IMG/VR virus record: IMGVR_UViG_3300042261_002385
Coordinates: 186,001-250,000 of that record
Length of the DNA: 64,000 nt
Direction: 5' to 3' (one strand)
Translations under genes and position numbers: made by a program
Shown here: one piece after another, positions 26 through 19,047 of the stretch
Layout: the number at the start of each line of letters is the position of its first letter
Position numbering within the stretch: position 1 is the stretch's first letter
Notes under the pieces: generated by a model
Told to the model about the DNA's origin: nothing
Seen by the model: only the letters and a program-made list of their open reading frames with translations
The model's database searches: none

Positions 26-811
26 ATGAAGAAAATTATGTTATCTGTTTATAACATACTCAAAGACTTGATTTTTTCTCAGAAGAAAATTGATAAATCA
101 AAACTTCCATCTCAAGGACTTTTTTATAAAGATGACCTTAATATATTTATTAAAAGGGCAAAAGAAGAGGATATAAACGAGTATGAAAGAAATTTCGTAA
201 AGAATAATTTAGGTCTAATAATTCAAAAAGTAAAACAGATAGTTGAAAATAATATTATTTTATCTAAAGGTTATTTATTTGAAGACCTAAAAAGTATAGA
301 CGTTGTTTTCATTTTTCTTGAAATTGTAAAATATACTAAAAACCAAAGCATTGTCATAAATTATGTTGATGAAATTAATAACAAACTAGACGATATTGAG
401 TTTAATCAAACTACATTTAACTATCATAAATTAAGTGACGAAGTTATGAAAAACTATAACCGTGAAGAAAAAAACTTTAAACTTAATGGATACACATACA
501 CATTACCTTCAATTGGAGTAGAAAATAGTTTAACCTTCTTTTTGTTCCACAAATCAACATCACAAGATTCTCACGTTTATCAGAATCTTTTCTATGACTT
601 CACATATTTTGTTGGAGATAAAAACTTTTTGACTTTTCAAGAGATTGAAAATCTGATACAAATTTTCAATCAAGATATTGAAAAAGAAGAATTAGAGAAA
701 GTTAAAAAAACCTTAGAAGTCTTTATTCCGCTACAAAAATATTCTCTAATAAAAGACGGCAAAGAAATAGATATAAATTCTAAAATAGATTTAGAAAATA
801 TCTGGAAATAA
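26..811 (+). CDS. Baseplate hub assembly protein-like (T4 gp26-like), paralog of 49235..50173
   Basis: LPSQGLFY motif parallels LPCGQFYP in 49235..50173; NGYTYTLPSIG parallels NGKFFELTPPNIG; AATATATA at 11-18 upstream. Confidence 0.5.
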   Translation: MKKIMLSVYNILKDLIFSQKKIDKSKLPSQGLFYKDDLNIFIKRAKEEDINEYERNFVKNNLGLIIQKVKQIVENNIILSKGYLFEDLKSIDVVFIFLEIVKYTKNQSIVINYVDEINNKLDDIEFNQTTFNYHKLSDEVMKNYNREEKNFKLNGYTYTLPSIGVENSLTFFLFHKSTSQDSHVYQNLFYDFTYFVGDKNFLTFQEIENLIQIFNQDIEKEELEKVKKTLEVFIPLQKYSLIKDGKEIDINSKIDLENIWK

Positions 812-836
812 AAAAACCTCCCAATATGAGAGGTTT
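809..836 (-). terminator. Intrinsic terminator after the TROVE gene
   Basis: Stem AAACCTC/GAGGTTT next to an A-run (U-tract on the minus strand) between convergent genes. Confidence 0.6.
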
Positions 837-840
837 GAAG

Positions 841-2295
841 TTAAACGAGTGATATAGATTTAATATCATTATATAAAGCCATTTTATCAGTCTCCATAAG
901 TTTCATAATATCAAAAACTTTATCAGAAAAACCAGCTAAACAAAAAACATTACTTTCAGGTAACTGTAAAGTTCCATAACCAGCCAAGTCCCAAGAGTAA
1001 ACAAACGGATTAGCATCAAATCTTTTCTTGTAAGCTTTGAACTCAGAAGAAGGACTAGTATAACCCACCCAACCTTGCATATCACTTAAAATAATAACTC
1101 GGTCATATTTTTTGTTTGCTTTTTGAAAAATTGATTTAAAGTTAGTTCCACCACCAGAATACTTGAAGCTGTTTCTGATAGACATAACAGAATCTAATGG
1201 ATTATATGATTTATAATTAGCATTTGTTGCAAAAGTCATAACATCACAGTTATTAACTTTAGCTAAAATAGCACCAAATAGTGACGCTATTTCAGATGCT
1301 CTACCCATCATAGAACCAGAAACATCCATAACTACTAGTGTTTCACCATCAAATTTAGGAACGTTCTGAACAGAAATTTCCAACGCTTGGTTGATAGCAA
1401 CTAAGACCTCTCTAACTTCTTTTGATTGACCAACTTTTTCAATCTCATCAAAAGCTGTAGTGAAACGAAAAGGTAAAACTCGTGATTTTTTAATTAAATT
1501 CTCATCAACTAACATCTCACAAGCAGCCTTAACAGATTGAGGAGACTGAGTAATTATGTTTCTTAGATTTCTAAGAAGAGCAAAATATCCAATCTTTCTA
1601 GTTTCAATCAACTCAGACCAAGCATTTGATTTTAAATCAGCTAATTCTTCTTCAGACTCAGCAACTTGACCAACTTTAGACAATTTAGCTTCCCAAGTGT
1701 CTGTATTTTTAAGTTCACCTTTAATAAGTAACTCAAGTGCCTCTTTATTTCTAAATGTAGGAACCGGGTGAACTAAATTTACAATATCCACAAGTTTAAC
1801 TTCTTTATTCTCACCTTTATACTTAGCTAATTGATAACCATCAAATTTATCAAAAGCCTTAGCAAATCCTTTTTTCAAAGCATTTGGAAACTTTGGATTG
1901 TCTTTTTCGGTTTTATAAGCCAAATAATAAGAAAGAATTTCGGTCATATCATCAACTCTAACGACAACTTTGTTGTAAAAATCTTTACCCCAATCAGCCC
2001 CAGATAACTGTGAAGTTAATTCAGCGGCTAAAGCGTGAGTCACACTACGCATTCCAAACTTATCACGAGCAAAGATAGCAGATTTAGCGACAAACTCTTT
2101 GTCTTTAACTTTCTCTGATAGTTTTTTCAACTCAACTAAAGTGGATTGAGCACCTCGGTAAAACTGGTCATTAACAAATGATGTTAATAACAAAGATACA
2201 AGAGCCATCTCAGATGACTGTGAGTATGCTTGACCACCAGCTAAGTTTTCAGTTAGTGTTTTTTGTTTTGGCATTGTTGCGTTAAATTTCGACAT
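841..2295 (-). CDS. rsr: Ro60/Rsr-like TROVE domain RNA-binding protein with C-terminal vWA domain
   Basis: N-terminal NLAGGQAY; helical TROVE region (ARDKFGMRS, TWEAKLS, GYFALLRNLRNI, RVLPFRF); vWA MIDAS motif DVSGSM, GGTN and ILSDMQ. Confidence 0.93.
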   Translation of the reverse strand: MSKFNATMPKQKTLTENLAGGQAYSQSSEMALVSLLLTSFVNDQFYRGAQSTLVELKKLSEKVKDKEFVAKSAIFARDKFGMRSVTHALAAELTSQLSGADWGKDFYNKVVVRVDDMTEILSYYLAYKTEKDNPKFPNALKKGFAKAFDKFDGYQLAKYKGENKEVKLVDIVNLVHPVPTFRNKEALELLIKGELKNTDTWEAKLSKVGQVAESEEELADLKSNAWSELIETRKIGYFALLRNLRNIITQSPQSVKAACEMLVDENLIKKSRVLPFRFTTAFDEIEKVGQSKEVREVLVAINQALEISVQNVPKFDGETLVVMDVSGSMMGRASEIASLFGAILAKVNNCDVMTFATNANYKSYNPLDSVMSIRNSFKYSGGGTNFKSIFQKANKKYDRVIILSDMQGWVGYTSPSSEFKAYKKRFDANPFVYSWDLAGYGTLQLPESNVFCLAGFSDKVFDIMKLMETDKMALYNDIKSISLV

Positions 2296-2323
2296 GACTT
2301 TTATTTTTTTTAATTTTTTCTAC

Positions 2324-2364
2324 AAAAAAAAGACCAGACTATCCGAAGATAAATCTGGTCTTTT
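2324..2364 (-). terminator. Intrinsic terminator between the structured RNAs and the TROVE start codon
   Basis: Minus strand AAAAGACCAGATTTATC-TTCG-GATAGTCTGGTC followed by 8 T. Confidence 0.85.
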
Positions 2365-2374
2365 ATATAATGTT

Positions 2375-2600
2375 GCAAACAAGATAATTTAGCCTGAGCG
2401 TTACAAAGAATTCTCCCGAAACTCTGCCGATAGTTGTAGTGACCATCTCACTTAACCCTTTACGTGGAATCATCCGGACTTTTTCACCTCAGCCATCTTT
2501 CAGGACTTGTTGGTAGTCTTAGCTGTCGCCATTAGACACTTTTCGATCGTTCTTAATTGAAATTGTATCTCGAAGTATCTCAAACTATCGCTATGTTTGC
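2375..2600 (-). ncRNA. Ro60-associated structured RNA 1 (Y-RNA-like, about 226 nt)
   Basis: Ends pair (GCAAACA/UGUUUGC; GAU/AUC; AGUUUGAG/CUCAGGCU with two G-U pairs that work only on the minus strand); GC visibly above background; internal hairpins; non-coding; next to TROVE. Confidence 0.72.
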
Positions 2601-2613
2601 TTTTAAACTATAT

Positions 2614-2695
2614 AATTGACCAGAGTAAATTGTCAAAGAGTGTTTTTTCATAATCCAAATTTCGAAGTAACTCTCTAACTCACTACTGGGTAATT
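2614..2695 (-). ncRNA. Ro60-associated structured RNA 2 (about 80 nt), same core fold as RNA 1
   Basis: CCA/UGG, UAGU bulge, GAGU/ACUC, AAUUU bulge, UAGAGAG/CUCUUUG; shares UAGYGA...GAGnUACUUCGA with RNA 1. Confidence 0.7.
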
Positions 2696-2818
2696 GTCAG
2701 TTAAACTTTTATTTCAAAAAATTAAAAAGTTTAAAAGGTTTTAATTTTTTTTCTTAAAAGTATGTTATATATCAACCTTAGAAATTTCGTTTTTTTCGAA
2801 GGTGGATTTTTTATAGCA

Positions 2819-2852
2819 TAAAAAAAGGAGAAAGTTTTAATTTTTCTCCTTT
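2819..2852 (-). terminator. Intrinsic terminator after nrdA
   Basis: Stem AAGGAGAAA/TTTCTCCTT with A-run on the plus strand. Confidence 0.75.
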
Positions 2853-2876
2853 AAGTATTTTTTATTAGAATCCTTA

Positions 2877-5429
2877 TCAGGAACCACATGAGAGGCAATC
2901 CTCTGGTGAATCCAAGCTACACGAGATTTCAGCCATTTGGTCTTCAACTGTTTTAACTTCTTTTTCTTCTTGAATAGTGAACTTAACTGCATCTGATGCA
3001 GATTTGTTTCTTAAGTAATACATACCAGTTTTAAGATTGTTTTTCTTTTCTCTATAGAATCTTGGACTACCGTCTTTATCATAAACAACTTGACAGTTTT
3101 CATCCTGTGGCAAAATTACTTGTCCCATATCATCTTTAAGTAGACTTCTTCTACCCCAACCATAAAAATGCATTGAAGTCAATTTTGCAAAGTTTGGAGA
3201 ATCCATAAAGATATTCATAGACTGTGTTTGGTCAATGAAAGCACCTCTCTCAGCCGCCATATCAATAACGTCTCTTTGTTTAATCTCATAAACTGTTTTG
3301 AAAATTTCCTTTATATTAGTAGGAATCTGTGGAACATTTTGAACTGAACCATTTTCTGAAATAATTCTTTTTCTTAAATTATCATCCCATATACCTAACT
3401 TAACTAATTCTTTCACTAAATATTTGTTAACTAAGATAAAAGTTCCTGATAGAACACCTCTTGTATACATATTTGAAGTTTGAGCCTCACAAGATGCTTC
3501 ATTTCCTAAGATAGAAGCAGTAGATGCCGTTGGCATAATACAAGTCGTAAGTGAGTTTCTAACTCCATATTTTTTAACTTCTTCTCTAAGTTTTTCCCAG
3601 TCCCATCTCTTAGTAGGTTTTGCTCCCCATAAGTCAAATTGAAATTTACCTTCAGACATTGGCGAACCTTTATAAGTAGCATAGTAACCGTCAACTTTAG
3701 CTAAATCACAAGATGCTTTAATCGAAGCGTAATAAATAGTTTCAAAAATCTCTTTATTGATTTGTTTTGCTTCATCTGAATCATAAGGTAATCCTAATAC
3801 GAAAAATACATCAGCTAGACCCTGAACACCTAAACCAACTGGTCTGTGTAATAGATTTGAAAATTTAGCAGCCTTAGAAGGATAGAAATTCACATCAATT
3901 ACATTGTTAAGATTAATAATAGCTTGATAAGCTACTTCATAAAGTTTATTGAAATTATAAGTCTTGTTTTTGTTAACAAATTTAGGAAGAGCTATTGAAG
4001 CTAAGTTACAAACAGCAGTTTCATTAACTGATTCTTCACCAATGAACTCAGATAACCCTAACTTATTTAAAAGTTCTGTGTCCTTTAATACGTCACTTTG
4101 AACTTTAGTAACACCAGTTGCTTCAACAATTTCAGCACAAAGATTAGAACTTCTAACAATTCCAATATTAGATTGATTTGATTTCTCGTTAATTGAATCT
4201 TTATAAAGAATATAAGGAGTTCCTGTTTCGATTTGAGATTCTAAAATTTTATTCCAAACTTCTCTTGCTTTAACAGTTTTTTTAGCTTTTCCTTCACTTT
4301 CATATTTCAAATATAATTGTCTAAATTCATCACCAAAAGTTTCATTAAGACCTTCACACTCGTTTGGACACATTAATGACCAATCCTCATCTAAATCTAC
4401 TCTTTCCATAAATAAATCATTAACCCACATAGCCAAGAAAAGGTCACGTGCTCTGATTTCATCTTTACCTTGATTCTTACGAAGGTCTAAGAACTCCATA
4501 ATATCACCGTGCCAAGGTTCCATATAGATAGCGATTGAACCTTTACGTTTACCACCACCCTGGTCAACCGCTCTTGCAGTTTCGTTGAAGATTTTTAAGA
4601 AAGGAATAATTCCATTTGATGTTCCGTTAGTTCCAGCAATGTAAGTTCCTTTAGCTCTAACTTTATTAAATGAAATACCAATACCACCTGCGTTTTTTGA
4701 AATTTGAGCAGACTCTTTAAGAGTGTTAAAAATTCCTTCAATTGAGTCAGTTTCTGTATCAAGTAAGAAACAAGAAGACAATTGTGGTCTAGTTGTTCCT
4801 GAGTTAAATAATGTAGGAGTAGCGTGTGTATAGTAACCTTCGGAAAGAGTGTTATAGGTTTCAATTACTCTGTCTAAGTTTTCTCCCCAAATTTGAAGAG
4901 CTGTTCTCATATACATATATTGAGGTCTTTCAGCAACTTCACCGTTTATTTTAAGCAAATATGATTTTTCTAATGTTTTATATCCAAAATAATCAAAATT
5001 ATGGTCTCTTGAGTGAACAATTGCAGAATCTAATTCATCAGCATATTTTTTTACTATTTTAAAAAAACTTTCAGAAACAATTGGAGAATGTTTACCTGTT
5101 TTTGGATTTATATAGTTGTAAAGATCTTTAACTGTTTCAGAAAAACTTTTCTTTGTTTCTTTATGTAGTGCAGTAATAGCTAGTCTAGCAGCTAAGACTG
5201 AATAATCCGGATGTTTTGTTGTAAGTGAAGCCGCAGTTTCCATTGCTAATTGGTCTAGTGTAGAAGTCTTGATATCAGGTGTCACACCAGCGATAACTTT
5301 CTGAGCTACATCAAATGGTGATATCCATTTTGAATCTAATCCATAAGTCTGTTGATTTATTCTTTCTAAGATTTTATCCAGCATTACTGGTTCTTTTTTA
5401 CCATTTCTTTTCGTTACTTTAATATTCAT
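2877..5429 (-). CDS. nrdA: Class Ia ribonucleotide reductase large subunit with ATP cone
   Basis: ATP cone (VTKRNG), ATPTLFN, QLSSCF, SNLCAEI, VCNLAS, MPTAST, KTGMYY and C-terminal CLSCGS. Confidence 0.97.
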   Translation of the reverse strand: MNIKVTKRNGKKEPVMLDKILERINQQTYGLDSKWISPFDVAQKVIAGVTPDIKTSTLDQLAMETAASLTTKHPDYSVLAARLAITALHKETKKSFSETVKDLYNYINPKTGKHSPIVSESFFKIVKKYADELDSAIVHSRDHNFDYFGYKTLEKSYLLKINGEVAERPQYMYMRTALQIWGENLDRVIETYNTLSEGYYTHATPTLFNSGTTRPQLSSCFLLDTETDSIEGIFNTLKESAQISKNAGGIGISFNKVRAKGTYIAGTNGTSNGIIPFLKIFNETARAVDQGGGKRKGSIAIYMEPWHGDIMEFLDLRKNQGKDEIRARDLFLAMWVNDLFMERVDLDEDWSLMCPNECEGLNETFGDEFRQLYLKYESEGKAKKTVKAREVWNKILESQIETGTPYILYKDSINEKSNQSNIGIVRSSNLCAEIVEATGVTKVQSDVLKDTELLNKLGLSEFIGEESVNETAVCNLASIALPKFVNKNKTYNFNKLYEVAYQAIINLNNVIDVNFYPSKAAKFSNLLHRPVGLGVQGLADVFFVLGLPYDSDEAKQINKEIFETIYYASIKASCDLAKVDGYYATYKGSPMSEGKFQFDLWGAKPTKRWDWEKLREEVKKYGVRNSLTTCIMPTASTASILGNEASCEAQTSNMYTRGVLSGTFILVNKYLVKELVKLGIWDDNLRKRIISENGSVQNVPQIPTNIKEIFKTVYEIKQRDVIDMAAERGAFIDQTQSMNIFMDSPNFAKLTSMHFYGWGRRSLLKDDMGQVILPQDENCQVVYDKDGSPRFYREKKNNLKTGMYYLRNKSASDAVKFTIQEEKEVKTVEDQMAEISCSLDSPEDCLSCGS

Positions 5430-15748: not shown

Positions 15749-17464
15749 TTATTTATTGTTGTAGTTTTTAAAAGTGTAAACTTGACTTTCTTTCAATTCT
15801 GCCTGAAAGGATGTCATAATCTCTTTCAACGTCGTATTAAAGTCTCTCATATCAGCTCCGAATTCACCAAGTGAAGCATACATATTTTCACCTTCGAATT
15901 GTAAAGTTCTTTTAGCTAATCTTGCAATTTTCTCAGCAACAACTTTTCTTTTGTTTTTATCAGATATAACTTCAATACTCTCATTATATAATGGTCCGAA
16001 ATCAGACATAGTTTTTGAATATTTACCATAAAGATGCTCATAAACTTCTTCATAAAGAGCCTTTATTGATTTTTTAGCATCTACGTCCATTTTCTTGTCT
16101 AAGATATTTTTGATAAATTCGTCAGTGATTCCGATTCCTTTATCTTTTTCATCTTTTAATACTTTAAGTGATTTCTGAGCATTTTTAAATGCTTGTGTTA
16201 AATGTTCTTCAGCTGAAGTAATTTCTACATTTCTTGGTTGTTTAGAAAACTCTTTAGAAAATTCTTTTTCAAAAATTGAATAAGTTAAAATAGACTCTCT
16301 TACTTTTTGTCTTTGGACTCTTGCTACTTCTTCAGCATTCTTTTTTCTAATTCTTTCTTCATCTTCTGTTGAACCAGATTCACCGGCCAACCTAACTCCT
16401 TCAAAAGAAATAATCATACTTTGAAGAGCTTGAAGATTTTTAATCATAGTAGGGTAAAGAGATTTAAGTGGTTTAGCATTTTTTTCTTCTTCAGCTGAAA
16501 TTGCTATTTGGTCACCTTCTTTTTCACCAGAACTAGAAGTTACTACAGTGATGTCTGTGTTTTCAACATAAGTGATATCTATATCCTGAATAAAGATATT
16601 TACCACACCATTTCCTTCTAAGTTACCACCAAAAGCCATATGTAAATAAGCCAAACAGTCTTCTACAGTTGGATAAGGTTTACAAACCCAGATTGCTAAA
16701 ATAATTAGACCAGCCATAAGTAACATACCACCAATAGCAGCCATAGCTACAGGTCCTAAACCTAAAGTTAAACCAGCTAAACTAATACCAGCCACTTTTA
16801 AAACTCCTATAATAATTAAACCGATTGTTGTCTTTTTCATGATTTGAGAAACGACACCGTTAAATCTAGCATTTTTAATACCTAAAGCATGAGCTATTTT
16901 TTCAAATACACCATAATATTTTACTTCATCATCACCAATAGCGTATGGACTATCAGCTTCATTTAATTTAACTTGATTACCAACTGATTGTAATTTATCA
17001 GGAGTCACACCTGCTTCTTGCCAGTTTACAGCGGACTTAGCTTTTTGACACAAAATCTGCCAAATTCTTTGAAAATTAGGTCTATTATTTTCATCACATA
17101 AACCGTTTGAAACAATAAAGTCCTTGAAACCACTCAACATATCTTTGATTTTAGTCCAAGTTTTTGTTCCGATTTCTTTTATTTTATTGAAAATTGATCC
17201 TGCTAACTTACTTAAGGAAAAGTTTTTAAAGAAATTTACAACTCCGGTAAAAAATTTACTAATTGCATCTTTAACATTAGTATAAACATTTGATACTGCT
17301 TGTTTTCCTTTTTGGATAAGATTTCCGATAAACTCTTCAGTTATTAGCGATTCTAATGGATTTATTATATCTTCAGCCGTGATGTTTTGATCAGTCAAAA
17401 ACTGACATTCCATCAATTTAGCCTCGTATAGTTTGGAGTAATTTGTGAAACTTTGAACTCTCAT
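15749..17464 (-). CDS. Putative packaged protein with TM hairpin; C-terminal domain shared with 54912..57809
   Basis: MRVQSFTNYSKLYEA; long hydrophobic stretch TTIGLIIIG...ILAIWV; DKGIG and VVAEKIAR shared with the 966-aa ORF. Confidence 0.78.
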   Translation of the reverse strand: MRVQSFTNYSKLYEAKLMECQFLTDQNITAEDIINPLESLITEEFIGNLIQKGKQAVSNVYTNVKDAISKFFTGVVNFFKNFSLSKLAGSIFNKIKEIGTKTWTKIKDMLSGFKDFIVSNGLCDENNRPNFQRIWQILCQKAKSAVNWQEAGVTPDKLQSVGNQVKLNEADSPYAIGDDEVKYYGVFEKIAHALGIKNARFNGVVSQIMKKTTIGLIIIGVLKVAGISLAGLTLGLGPVAMAAIGGMLLMAGLIILAIWVCKPYPTVEDCLAYLHMAFGGNLEGNGVVNIFIQDIDITYVENTDITVVTSSSGEKEGDQIAISAEEEKNAKPLKSLYPTMIKNLQALQSMIISFEGVRLAGESGSTEDEERIRKKNAEEVARVQRQKVRESILTYSIFEKEFSKEFSKQPRNVEITSAEEHLTQAFKNAQKSLKVLKDEKDKGIGITDEFIKNILDKKMDVDAKKSIKALYEEVYEHLYGKYSKTMSDFGPLYNESIEVISDKNKRKVVAEKIARLAKRTLQFEGENMYASLGEFGADMRDFNTTLKEIMTSFQAELKESQVYTFKNYNNK

Positions 17465-17520
17465 ATAAAATTTTTTAATTTTTAGGTAAATTATATATTA
17501 AATTCAAAAATTGAGTTTTT

Positions 17521-19047
17521 TTAGATTTCCGCTTCTAATCTTTTAATTTCATCCATAACTTCTTTTAACTCTTCCTTTTTTTGCATCATAATTTTCTTAT
17601 TCTTCTTTCTATCTGCATAGACATCTTCCAACATTAGAAGTGTAGGTGACTTTCTTTTTTCAAAAACAACACCATTCACACAAAGAACATGTTTTTCTAA
17701 GTCAATAGGTCGACCATTTGTGCATTTAGATTTGTCTTTTTCATCTTGAAGACCAACAAAAGTTTCAGGAGCTATAAAGAATTGTCTTTGAGTAGTAGGA
17801 TATAGTGAAGCAAAGTCATAAGTAACACACCACTGGTTCATTCCAACTACAGGGTCTTTTACCCAACCACCAGCAATCGTTGATTCAGCATCACCTTTTT
17901 CATCTCTGAAAAGTACTATGTTATCCATTTCTCTAAAACGGTTTCTTAAAACTCCTTCTGTGATGGCTAGTGAACCAAGTGCGTTGTTCATTTGAGAAAC
18001 AACATCTACGATTCTGATTTGAGCAAGTGATGAAATCGCATAGATGATAGAGATATAATTTCTAGCTTCGTGAATTTTTTGAACCAGAACACTATCGACA
18101 GCGTTATAATACATAAAAGTCTCAAAATCATCTTCATATAGTTTTTGAAGAGATCCGGTATATTTAATCTTTTCAACACCAACGAGTTTATGAGAAACAA
18201 AATCTAGTGAAGAAGACTCTTTTACCTTAATTGAAGTGTCACAGATTTCATAAAGTTGCATGTAATCAAAAATCATTCTGTGAGCAGGCACTTCATATTC
18301 AGTTCCCCAAGCTTTTGTTATTCTTTTAGTCAGTGAAGAAACAGCTGGATCAATTTTGTATTCTCTACCATTAGCCCATTTACTAATTTTACGAGAACGG
18401 TTTACTAAATATAACCAGTCATATTGTAAGAAGTTCCAACCTGTAAGCAGTGGCATTTTTGGAACCATTTTGTAGAAGAAAGCATATAACATATCAAACT
18501 CATCTTCATATTTAATATATTTGAACTTATATTCTGTTCCAAATTTTTCAAAATATTTATTAGTATTATTTAATATACGTTCTTGCATGTCTTCTGGCAT
18601 GTCTTTCAGACCCAAAAGAATGATTTTATCATCATAGACTATTGAAATAGAAAGAATTTGAGTAATAGCTCCTTCTTTTACAACGTTTCCGGCAGCATCT
18701 TTAACATCGGCTGCTTCAGGAAAACCATCAATAATCTCAGTCTCAATATCTATAAAGTATATCTTTGGTAGATTGAATTCAAATATCTCTTGTTTTTCTT
18801 TTTCCGGTAGTGAGTCTAAAAATTCATAAGTAGCATATCTATCTGGTTGGTTTACTTCTATTTGCTTAACGGATTTTCCATCCCAAGATCGAAACGAGGG
18901 GTGTCGTTGTGGATCTGTATCCTCACAAGCAACATATTTCATAGGATTATCCCAGTTATAATATTTGAGTTTTATATCACCTGTCTTATCAACATAGCTG
19001 ACTACAAGTTTTTTACTATTTGATAGATATTGAGTTTCTACAAGCAC
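17521..19047 (-). CDS. gp43: Family B DNA polymerase, N-terminal half (gp43A-like split polymerase)
   Basis: ExoI DIETE, ExoII GWNFLQYD, ExoIII YNAVD, motif A DFASLYP; stops in the fingers, lacking KxxxNSxYG and YGDTDS. Confidence 0.9.
   Translation of the reverse strand: MLVETQYLSNSKKLVVSYVDKTGDIKLKYYNWDNPMKYVACEDTDPQRHPSFRSWDGKSVKQIEVNQPDRYATYEFLDSLPEKEKQEIFEFNLPKIYFIDIETEIIDGFPEAADVKDAAGNVVKEGAITQILSISIVYDDKIILLGLKDMPEDMQERILNNTNKYFEKFGTEYKFKYIKYEDEFDMLYAFFYKMVPKMPLLTGWNFLQYDWLYLVNRSRKISKWANGREYKIDPAVSSLTKRITKAWGTEYEVPAHRMIFDYMQLYEICDTSIKVKESSSLDFVSHKLVGVEKIKYTGSLQKLYEDDFETFMYYNAVDSVLVQKIHEARNYISIIYAISSLAQIRIVDVVSQMNNALGSLAITEGVLRNRFREMDNIVLFRDEKGDAESTIAGGWVKDPVVGMNQWCVTYDFASLYPTTQRQFFIAPETFVGLQDEKDKSKCTNGRPIDLEKHVLCVNGVVFEKRKSPTLLMLEDVYADRKKNKKIMMQKKEELKEVMDEIKRLEAEI

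What the first reader, a model, noticed from the sequence alone, without database searches (positions are those of the whole stretch)
841..2700. Phage Ro60/TROVE gene preceded by two related non-canonical structured RNAs
Seen: two non-coding elements upstream of TROVE share one fold (terminal helix, UAGY bulge, short helix, opposite AAUU bulge, 7-8 bp helix, loop starting UACUUCGA). Helix sequences differ while pairing is kept (AGUUUGAG/CUCAGGCU versus UAGAGAG/CUCUUUG), and the G-U pairs favour the TROVE strand. Established: Ro60 proteins bind Y RNAs encoded beside rsr, including in some phages. Inference: these are a distinct Y-RNA class, since I see neither the classic GGUCCGA/bulged-C Ro site nor a clean YrlA cloverleaf.
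Basis: partly seen in the sequence, partly recalled or inferred. Interest (0 to 1): 0.85.

Follow-up and report, generated by a model that had tools for sequence, protein, structure and literature searches.

The report
Phage Ro60 gene with two Y RNAs
Just upstream of a giant freshwater phage's Ro60 gene lie two real, conserved structured RNAs of the bacterial Y-RNA kind; the longer one carries a large new domain in place of the usual tRNA-like one and turns up on its own in many lake and river RNA samples.

Summary
Two elements lie upstream of the TROVE/Ro60 ORF (841-2295, minus strand): E1 (2689..2620, 70 nt) and E2 (2600..2375, 226 nt). Both have a closing helix P1, a 6-nt UAGYGA strand opposite an 8-nt AAUUNNCU strand, a 9-10 bp helix P2, then UACUUCG. 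Covariation is strong for this stem in the short elements and positive for E2's inner helices. The composite motif occurs only twice in 64 kb.

These are Y-RNA-like partners of the phage Ro60, but the stem is not a phage novelty. The same stem lies upstream of TROVE in related phages and in 45 of 72 bacterial loci, mostly Bacteroidota. There it often encloses the T and D arms typical of YrlA.

What is new is E2's ~180-nt multi-helix module. It matches no tRNA or Rfam family and was found only in this megaphage clade. In four metatranscriptomes RNA contigs cover E2, and in one also E1, but not the flanking genes.

One RNA contig is cyclic, joining E2's 3' end to its 5' end. No such junction was found in DNA collections. 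This is a lead for circularisation, not proof. Ro60 binding is inferred, not shown.

The parts
841..2295 (-). Ro60/TROVE protein gene (484 aa) with a C-terminal vWA domain carrying the DxSxS metal-site motif
   Evidence: ORF. Pfam TROVE at E 1.4e-19, plus VWA_CoxE and vWA_Ro60 below their curated cut-offs. The closest solved structure is Thermus phage phiLo Ro60 (9KOP/9L5Y), E 2e-24 over residues 12-477; human and Xenopus Ro60 and Deinococcus Rsr also match. D324, S326 and S328 are invariant in 8 homologues.
2324..2360 (-). Intrinsic terminator between E2 and the TROVE start codon. Stem 2360-2348 with 2343-2332, UUCG loop, U run 2331-2324.
   Evidence: Sequence. Terminator-type partial Rfam alignments. 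Folded as a hairpin. A GACCAG...CUGGUC hairpin plus U run follows E2 in nearly all related loci.
2375..2600 (-). E2, the long Y-RNA-like RNA (226 nt). P1 is 2600-2594 with 2381-2375. The 5' loop strand UAGCGA is 2593-2588. P2 is 2587-2579 with 2398-2390. UACUUCG is 2577-2571. The 3' loop strand AAUUAUCU is 2389-2382. The inner module (about 2570-2400) has at least five further helices.
   Evidence: Parse. Alignments A2 and A3. RNAalifold. Pair counts (helices here called P4, P6, P9 and P10 show changes on both sides). RNA contigs 2394-2585, 2373-2590 and 2359-2589 in four metatranscriptomes, with no contig laid on the flanking genes. Held at a share of 0.67 or more in 20 RNA runs.
2356..2371 (-). 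3' strand of a helix (P0) that encloses E2. 2371-2363 pairs with 2607-2615. 2360-2356 (GACCA, also the terminator's 5' arm) pairs with 2618-2622.
   Evidence: RNAduplex on 30 distinct flank pairs gives a mean of -13.8 kcal/mol against -3.5 for shuffles. The inner helix is part of the unconstrained minimum-energy fold. Own flank pairs beat permuted pairs (1 of 5000), but relatedness inflates this.
2607..2622 (-). 5' strand of the enclosing helix P0. It overlaps the last three bases of E1's closing helix (UGG, 2622-2620) and a sigma-70-like -10 box (TATAGT, 2612-2607).
   Evidence: Promoter-like site TTGACA-18-TATAGT at 2636..2607, matching 11 of 12.
2620..2689 (-). E1, the short Y-RNA-like RNA (70 nt). 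P1 is 2689-2686 with 2623-2620. UAGUGA is 2685-2680. P2 is 2679-2670 with 2641-2632. The loop 2669-2642 starts with UACUUCGA and ends with AAAAAAC. AAUUUACU is 2631-2624.
   Evidence: Fold (z -2.44). Alignment A1 and pair counts. Model R1 scores 82.6 bits. An RNA contig of a close variant covers 2589-2736 in one of four runs.
2753..2820 (-). Conserved upstream element, an imperfect hairpin or inverted repeat ending in GAUAUAUAAC. It may be the promoter or operator of the E1-E2(-TROVE) unit.
   Evidence: Found in 41 distinct loci at a nearly fixed distance, with co-varying arms seen by eye. The exact 14-mer is unique in the window. Its function was not tested.
2824..2852 (-). Terminator hairpin of the upstream RNR gene. 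It marks the start of the non-coding unit.

Best explanation
E1 and E2 are two phage-encoded Y-RNA-like (Yrl) non-coding RNAs that partner the Ro60/TROVE protein encoded just downstream.

Shared stem. Both carry the same module: closing helix P1, a conserved asymmetric internal loop (UAGYGA opposite AAUUNNCU), helix P2, then UUAC/AUAC-UUCG. By analogy with characterised Y RNAs, this is where the Ro60 ring binds (inferred).

E1 is the minimal form, a stem plus a small loop. It is YrlB-like and may act as a gate or competitor.

E2 carries a ~180-nt multi-helix module where YrlA RNAs carry a tRNA-like domain. By analogy with Yrn1 and YrlA, it would tether Ro60 to an unknown host or phage effector, such as an exoribonuclease or an RNA repair or decay factor. 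This is inferred.

Expression. The unit is transcribed from upstream of E1. E2 is released and accumulates as a stable RNA. A terminator between E2 and the ORF keeps TROVE mRNA far scarcer than the RNAs. Contigs show the RNAs accumulate; the way they are processed is inferred.
For: Protein. The gene is a Ro60 homologue closest to phiLo Ro60, which binds two upstream Yrl RNAs in vitro (PMC12135203).

Linkage. Same-stem elements lie on the TROVE strand upstream of TROVE in nearly all of 30 viral loci. In 72 bacterial loci the model gives 63 matches, in 45 of the loci; all are on the TROVE strand and 62 lie upstream. In 869 kb of control viral DNA the model hits 10 places, 7 of them in TROVE loci.

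Structure. Covariation supports the stem and E2's inner helices.

Link to YrlA. The same stem encloses T, acceptor-like and D arms that match Rfam YrlA at E about 1e-8 in relatives. The layout of P1, a 5-6 x 8 internal loop, P2 and YUAY matches the YrlA consensus and the description in PMC4201824.

Expression. Contigs of four metatranscriptomes from four studies cover E2 (and 2589-2736, which includes E1, in one). None was laid on about 1,450 nt of TROVE or about 900 nt of RNR. Twenty RNA runs hold at least 0.67 of E2's sampled words.

Strand. G-U pairs fix it.
Against: No binding data exist for this Ro60.

The published GNCGAAN0-1G motif is met only loosely. E2 has AGCGAUAG and E1 has AGUGAGUU; the nearly invariant UACUUCG has U in place of the first G.

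Neither element passes any Rfam Y RNA model. The stem model does not match the validated phiLo Yrl region.

E2 at 226 nt, and up to about 290 nt in relatives, is far larger than the 80-130 nt of known Y RNAs.

Contigs give neither strand nor exact ends.

One related locus (L101) keeps the RNAs without a TROVE gene in the 5 kb held downstream of them.
Confidence: 0.8

Rival explanations
1. E1 and E2 with the terminator form a cis-acting leader that controls TROVE transcription (attenuator or riboswitch-like), and are not trans-acting RNP RNAs. The 3' strand of E1's closing helix and the spacer can pair with the spacer and the terminator's 5' arm. That pairing would act as an antiterminator enclosing E2. 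Ro60 binding to E1 would free the terminator and shut off its own gene. This could also coexist with the Y RNA role.
For: A terminator sits 28 nt before the ATG with no room for a separate promoter. The flank complementarity is conserved in 30 distinct loci. Transcripts truncated before the terminator's 3' arm fold with the CUGGUC/GACCAG helix at the expense of E1's 4-bp closing helix. TROVE mRNA is absent from RNA contigs while E2 is present.
Against: E2 accumulates as a discrete RNA. The same stem in bacteria is followed by tRNAs or further Y RNAs, not by a terminator plus ORF. The full-length fold favours the terminator by 7.4 kcal/mol, and a local hairpin should win kinetically. The outer helix does not vary, so there is no covariation for it. 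No known riboswitch or T-box model matches.
Confidence: 0.1
2. E2 is a stable phage small RNA with a function unrelated to Ro60, for example a decoy or scaffold for another host factor. Its stem resembles E1 only through local duplication.
For: E2's module matches nothing known. It is much larger than known Y RNAs. In relatives Rfam YrlA matches only the tRNA-like core and aligns the stem poorly.
Against: The E2 stem motifs (UAGCGA, the P2 geometry, UACUUCG, AAUUNNCU) are those of elements linked to TROVE across phages and several bacterial phyla. In all 45 metagenome loci that could be parsed, E2 is single-copy and followed by the terminator, and E1 lies upstream in 43 of them.
Confidence: 0.06
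3. These are chance hairpins or ordinary promoter and terminator signals in an AT-rich intergenic region.
For: Single-sequence fold z-scores are modest (-2.44 and -1.98). A sigma-70-like promoter overlaps E1's 3' half.
Against: Motif statistics, model specificity, covariation and RNA contigs all speak against it.
Confidence: 0.01

Closest known systems
YrlA RNAs of bacteria and mycobacteriophages (Rfam RF02553; Chen et al. 2014, PMC4201824; structure preprint 10.1101/312249)
   Same: Encoded next to, and on the strand of, a Ro60 gene. The 5' and 3' ends pair. The layout is P1, an asymmetric internal loop (5-6 nt opposite 8 nt), P2 and then YUAY (here UUAC or AUAC). Close relatives of these phage RNAs carry the YrlA T, acceptor-like and D arms inside the same stem.
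   Different: The window's E2 has no T or D arm and no YrlA or tRNA match at E<=10. Its module is about 180 nt, with different helices. The GNCGAAN0-1G motif is only approximated. The nearly invariant UACUUCG and YAGYGA are not part of the published description. Even the tRNA-like relatives stay below Rfam's gathering score (42-44 bits against 69).
YrlB / Yrn2-type short Y RNAs (PMC4201824)
   Same: E1 is a second, small Ro60-linked RNA beside the long one. It is a long hairpin without a tRNA-like module and is probably made from the same transcript. In M. smegmatis YrlA and YrlB are processed from one precursor.
   Different: E1's loop is A-rich, not pyrimidine-rich. No sequence similarity could be tested because no YrlB model is in Rfam.
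Yrl1 and Yrl2 of Thermus phage phiLo (PMC12135203)
   Same: Two Y-RNA-like RNAs lie just upstream of a phage Ro60 gene. That Ro60 is this protein's closest solved relative. Both bind the protein in EMSA and form complexes with host PNPase. E1 holds a CGAA.
   Different: The stem model R1 finds nothing in the phiLo upstream region (best 5.7 bits). E2 has CGAG and CGAU rather than CGAA. The phiLo RNAs are compact hairpins.
Metazoan Y RNAs (Rfam RF00019) and Deinococcus Yrn1
   Same: The general logic is the same: a Ro60-binding stem plus a variable effector module that tethers Ro60 to a partner (PNPase for Yrn1).
   Different: There is no GGUCCGA/bulged-C helix and no Rfam match.

Membership tests
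Bacterial/phage Y-RNA-like (Yrl) RNAs in the broad sense (Chen et al. 2014) | Encoded within about 4 kb of a Ro60/TROVE gene and on the same strand | tested here: met
   E1 and E2 lie 80-395 nt upstream of the TROVE ATG on the minus strand. The same holds in related viral loci and in 62 of 63 bacterial model hits.
Bacterial/phage Y-RNA-like (Yrl) RNAs in the broad sense (Chen et al. 2014) | The 5' and 3' ends pair into a long stem interrupted by an internal loop | tested here: met
   P1 and P2 have compensatory changes.
Bacterial/phage Y-RNA-like (Yrl) RNAs in the broad sense (Chen et al. 2014) | GNCGAAN0-1G motif near the 5' end | tested here: inconclusive
   By eye, E2 has AGCGAUAG (5 of 7 specified positions) and E1 has AGUGAGUU. 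Relatives have GGCGAUG, AGCGAAAUG and GACGAG. UACUUCGA(A) is a second CGA-containing candidate, and cmscan aligned it to the motif in L020.
Bacterial/phage Y-RNA-like (Yrl) RNAs in the broad sense (Chen et al. 2014) | Bound and stabilised by the Ro60 protein | not testable with these tools
   Needs RIP or EMSA.
YrlA (Rfam RF02553) | tRNA-like core with conserved T and D arms around an acceptor-like stem | tested here: not met
   No YrlA or tRNA match in 2200-2950 at E<=10. ARAGORN finds none. RNAalifold and manual helices of E2 do not give this layout. The feature is met in related loci L016, L018, L020, L027 and in many bacterial loci.
YrlA (Rfam RF02553) | Score at or above the Rfam gathering threshold (69 bits) | tested here: not met
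   Zero matches in the window. None in 18 viral loci or in 20 bacterial loci. The best sub-threshold scores are 42-44 bits.
YrlA (Rfam RF02553) | Conserved YUAY directly after the stem's 5' strand | tested here: met
   UUAC in E1 and AUAC in E2. It is nearly invariant in alignments A1 and A3.
Metazoan Y RNA (Rfam RF00019) | Conserved GGUCCGA 5' strand in a helix with a bulged C | tested here: not met
   No match at E<=10. An inner GUCCG in E2 (2479-2475) varies among relatives (GUUCG, GUUUG, GUCCA), so it is not a fixed sequence site.
phiLo-type phage Yrl RNAs (PMC12135203) | Sequence and structure similarity to the validated Yrl1/Yrl2 region; CGAA in an internal bulge | tested here: not met
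   R1 scores at most 10 bits anywhere in the phiLo locus and 5.7 bits upstream of the gene. CGAA is present only in E1's apical loop.
Known cis-regulatory leaders (riboswitches, T-box) | Match to a curated aptamer or leader model | tested here: not met
   No such match at E<=10.

The most novel reading that the evidence does not exclude
E2 is a new kind of Y RNA. Its Ro60-type stem carries a large non-tRNA effector domain found only in Bacteroidota-infecting megaphages. It is cut out of the E1-E2 precursor at the base of a flanking processing helix and joined end to end into a circle. The same flanking helix doubles as an antiterminator, which lets Ro60 occupancy of E1 set the level of Ro60 mRNA.
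Probability: 0.2. Interest if true: 0.8.

Novelty: new variant of a known kind. Interest (0 to 1): 0.6.

Why it matters
Y RNAs are modular: a Ro60-binding stem plus a module that chooses the partner. Described bacterial and phage long Y RNAs carry a tRNA-like module, or a partly tRNA-like one in Deinococcus Yrn1. Here a whole clade of giant freshwater phages keeps the stem but has swapped that module for a larger, covariation-supported domain. This implies a different, unknown partner for phage Ro60.

The RNA is assembled from at least 20 environmental metatranscriptomes. It is therefore an abundant and easily tracked marker of these infections.

The work also shows that a widespread stem type falls below Rfam's YrlA threshold, so it goes unannotated by that model. 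It occurs in Bacteroidota, Sericytochromatia, Chloroflexota and Verrucomicrobia and in their phages.

If the end-to-end junction is real, it would be the first circular Y RNA I am aware of; none is reported in the papers searched here.

Tried and rejected
Rfam at gathering score on the window, on 18 viral loci and on 20 bacterial loci gave no Y RNA family.

A 14-base pattern scan of viral contigs (TAGCGA-N9-10-TACTTCGA) returned mostly chance matches. Only about a dozen of 120 loci formed a stem by my parse; seven of those and two loci without a parsed stem carry TROVE.

A tandem DNA copy as the source of the cyclic RNA contig was rejected. The 24-nt junction is absent from viral and metagenome contigs. 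The E2 5' 23-mer occurs once in each of 51 metagenome loci, and all 45 that could be parsed are linear.

An 8-bp alternative pairing of CGAUAGUU (E2's loop strand and P2) with AACUAUCG (2439-2432) was rejected by eye. Changes in relatives are not compensated.

Helix P7 of E2 (CG...CG around 2476/2463) reached only 30% pairing in alignment A3, probably because a large insertion disturbs the alignment. It is left open.

A 10-codon ORF inside E2 (AUG at 2530) is absent from most relatives.

RtcB or another RNA ligase was looked for among 23 ORFs of the window, and none was seen. The rest of the 436-kb genome was not examined.

The supplement of Chen et al. 2014 and two Wolin reviews are not held. 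I could therefore not check whether Bacteroidota Y RNAs of this stem type were already listed there.
Full report
WHAT IS THERE

The window is part of IMG/VR contig UViG_3300042261_002385, which is 436 kb long. Its nearest GenBank relative is the unannotated 634,780-bp 'uncultured phage' LR745206.1, with 81% identity for this protein. Al-Shayeb et al. 2020 (PMC7162821) describe a curated 634-kb genome. They predict that their largest genomes belong to the Mahaphage clade and replicate in Bacteroidetes. That LR745206.1 is that genome is my inference from its size.

The minus-strand ORF 841..2295 is a Ro60 homologue. Pfam gives TROVE at E 1.4e-19 plus a vWA domain. The best solved relative is Thermus phage phiLo Ro60, at E 2e-24. 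Upstream on the same strand lies the RNR large subunit gene, 2877..5429. The genes examined elsewhere in the window are for replication and nucleotide metabolism: DnaB, a helicase, PolB, ThyA and an Fpg-like protein.

ANATOMY OF THE 581-NT GAP, READ ON THE MINUS STRAND

The order of features is as follows.
- RNR terminator: 2852..2824.
- Conserved hairpin-like element: 2820..2753.
- E1: 2689..2620.
- A 19-nt spacer.
- E2: 2600..2375.
- A 14-nt spacer.
- An intrinsic terminator: 2360..2324.
- The TROVE ATG, 28 nt further on, at 2295.

E1 and E2 share one stem design.
- A closing helix P1: 4 bp in E1 and 7 bp in E2.
- A 6-nt 5' strand: UAGUGA in E1 and UAGCGA in E2.
- Helix P2: 10 bp in E1 and 9 bp in E2.
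- UACUUCGA directly after P2.
- On the way back, the P2 3' strand, an 8-nt strand (AAUUUACU in E1, AAUUAUCU in E2) and the P1 3' strand.

The composite motif occurs only at these two places in 64 kb, against 0.05 expected.

IS THE STRUCTURE REAL?

Thirty related viral loci carry a TROVE homologue of 49-100% identity. Nearly all have two or three ACUUCG-containing elements 100-500 nt upstream of it.

For 19 short elements, the P1 and P2 model gives 94.2% paired cells. Twelve of 14 pairs have changes on both sides. The covariation score is 0.647, against 0.206 for shuffles (0/500) and at most 0.168 when partners are slid.

A covariance model of the short element (R1) finds only E1 in the window: 82.6 bits, with 16 bits for the next best place.

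As a control I used 869 kb of viral DNA fetched by a loose 14-base pattern. R1 hits 10 places there, and 7 are in loci that encode TROVE.

For E2, 39 homologues of 214-292 nt were aligned. P1, P2 and six inner helices that I wrote by hand give 95.3% pairing, against at most 43.7% slid. Thirteen pairs show double changes (0/500). Helices P4, P6, P9 and P10 each have compensatory changes. P7 is not supported.

Frequent G-U pairs place the RNA on the TROVE strand.

WHAT FAMILY IS IT?

Rfam finds nothing in the window at gathering score. It finds no Y RNA, YrlA or tRNA even at E<=10, and ARAGORN finds nothing.

In the more distant viral loci (L016, L018, L020, L027; TROVE identity 49-60%), however, the same stem encloses GGUUCGAAUCC-type T arms and UAGCUCAGUGGUAGAGC-type D arms. 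Rfam YrlA matches these cores at E 6e-8 to 7e-9, with 42-44 bits against a gathering score of 69.

The YrlA consensus printed has the same layout. It shows a 6-bp P1, an internal loop of 5 nt opposite 8 nt, a 7-bp P2, a CUA bulge and then the tRNA-like core.

Chen et al. 2014 describe a GNCGAAN0-1G motif near the 5' end and a conserved YUAY that starts the variable loop. Here UUAC or AUAC fits YUAY. The loop strand UAGCGA(U/A) only approximates GNCGAA.

A profile of eight TROVE proteins retrieved 72 bacterial loci. Most are Saprospiraceae and other Bacteroidota; others are Sericytochromatia, Chloroflexota and Verrucomicrobia. R1 hits 63 places in 45 of these loci at E<=0.1. All are on the TROVE strand and 62 are upstream. 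They show the same YAGYGA, UUACUUCG and UUUUCUC signatures, in both short and tRNA-like long forms. Rfam reports none of them as YrlA at gathering score. It finds only the many tRNA genes interleaved with them.

So the stem is a widespread, divergent branch of the Yrl family and not a phage invention. E1 is its minimal form.

WHAT IS NEW

E2's inner module has no T or D arm. It consists of:
- a helix formed by ACUU of the conserved motif with a downstream AAGU;
- a covarying hairpin with a GC-GACA-GC tip;
- a UACC/GGUG stem capped by a hairpin of variable length;
- a 5-bp hairpin, AGUGA/UCACU;
- a two-part hairpin around UUUCGGGAGAA.

Longer relatives insert a further AAGGAA/UUCCUU hairpin. 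Its loop covaries with a downstream stretch, which suggests a pseudoknot; I saw this by eye and did not count it.

A 20-nt core of this module (up to 3 mismatches allowed) occurs in 12 viral and 36 metagenome loci of the megaphage clade, and in none of the 72 bacterial loci.

EXPRESSION

Four metatranscriptomes from four studies were laid on 801-3800. Contigs cover 2394-2585, 2373-2590 and 2359-2589, which is E2. In one run a contig also covers 2589-2736, which is E1 with its flanks, from a close variant. Depth is zero on TROVE and on RNR. Silent flanks argue against DNA carry-over.

Twenty RNA runs from freshwater, river and aquaculture samples hold at least 0.67 of E2's sampled words.

Contigs give no strand and no sharp ends.

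Two readings of how E2 is made remain open. The contig that bridges E1 and the first 12 nt of E2 favours a common precursor. The TTGACA-18-TATAGT site inside E1's 3' half would instead start E2 at about 2600.

AN UNEXPLAINED JUNCTION

In run X16 a 259-nt contig of an L003-like variant begins and ends with the same 30 letters. It joins 2605 back to 2369, with 2 nt of ambiguity. In RNA sense, E2's 3' end is joined to its 5' end.

The junction 24-mer is absent from viral and metagenome DNA collections. E2's 5' 23-mer occurs once in each of 51 metagenome loci. All 45 that could be parsed are linear, and 43 of them have E1 upstream. A tandem DNA copy is therefore unlikely.

The joined ends lie exactly at the inner end of a helix formed by E2's flanks. 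In that helix 2615-2607 pairs with 2371-2363. It is extended by UGGUC (2622-2618) pairing with GACCA (2360-2356).

This looks like a processing stem, and a circle is a reasonable reading. It rests on one assembled contig from one run. Template switching by reverse transcriptase cannot be excluded, and I had no further read-laying run.

HOW IT MOST LIKELY WORKS

Shown:
- two conserved, structured RNAs on the Ro60 strand;
- the long one accumulates while the neighbouring genes yield no contigs;
- the stem is shared with YrlA-type RNAs.

Inferred from the characterised systems (Xenopus Ro60-Y RNA, Deinococcus Rsr-Yrn1-PNPase, Salmonella YrlA, phiLo Yrl1/2; PMC4201824, 10.1101/312249, PMC12135203):
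- the stem binds the phage Ro60 ring;
- E2's module recruits a partner, so that Ro60 is directed to particular RNAs during infection;
- E1 competes for or gates the ring.

The outer part of the flanking helix uses the same CUGG as E1's 4-bp closing helix and the same GACCAG as the terminator. Truncated transcripts fold into it. A feedback in which Ro60 bound to E1 favours termination before its own gene is therefore possible, but untested. The full-length fold prefers the terminator by 7.4 kcal/mol.

VERDICT

The finding is real and well placed. It is a Y-RNA system of a known kind. It uses a stem type that current Rfam models miss, and its long member carries a new module. Novelty is 'new variant of a known kind'.

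The circular junction and the possible autoregulatory switch are the parts that would raise the interest if confirmed.

Noticed in passing
window 2753-2820 (minus strand): A conserved element about 65 nt upstream of E1. It reads CUAUAAAAAAUCCACC..., then an A-rich loop, then ...GGUUGAUAUAUAAC, with co-varying arms. It is present at a nearly fixed distance in 41 distinct related loci. It may be the promoter or operator of the RNA unit. The RNA contig in X16 begins at 2736, just downstream.
   Followed up: partly
window 2369-2605; run X16, record 3: A cyclic 259-nt metatranscriptome contig joins E2's 3' end to its 5' end. No such junction was found in the viral or metagenome DNA collections. Possible circular RNA, tandem cDNA or artefact.
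   Followed up: partly
window 2607-2622 with 2356-2371: E2's flanks pair with each other in all 30 distinct flank pairs examined. The outer part competes with E1's closing helix and with the terminator hairpin, so it could be a processing stem and/or an antiterminator.
   Followed up: partly
L023, L024, L028: 3466-4170: In three related phage contigs the TROVE gene is split after residue 160 by about 700 nt. The insert carries a 224-aa ORF with weak NUMOD3 and HNH endonuclease hits, so it looks like a homing-endonuclease-type insertion.
   Followed up: partly
L206, L207, L231, L237, L245, L249 (bacterial TROVE loci), the 3 kb upstream of TROVE: Arrays of up to about 17 tRNA genes are interleaved with Y-RNA-like elements on the TROVE strand. 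Some of these small MAG contigs may themselves be phage or mobile DNA.
   Followed up: no
L101: 5280-5620 (minus strand): A cluster of three Y-RNA-like elements resembling that of L016, but with no TROVE ORF in the 5 kb held downstream of them. The third element looks disrupted.
   Followed up: partly
L016 about 2437-2575; L018 about 2531-2663; L020 about 2539-2663; L101 ending about 5610 (minus strand): A small conserved ORF, ending ...SSF(V/I)R(Y/F)II(I/K)(K/Q)FF(E/K)..., stops just before the first Y RNA in the tRNA-like-type loci. It may be a small DNA-binding regulator. It was not identified; my one Pfam attempt had wrong coordinates.
   Followed up: no
window 15749-19047 (minus strand): The family-B DNA polymerase signal lies in a 508-aa ORF (17521-19047). 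That ORF covers the exonuclease domain and only the start of the polymerase domain. The adjacent 571-aa ORF (15749-17464) has no Pfam hit. The polymerase may be split or very divergent.
   Followed up: no
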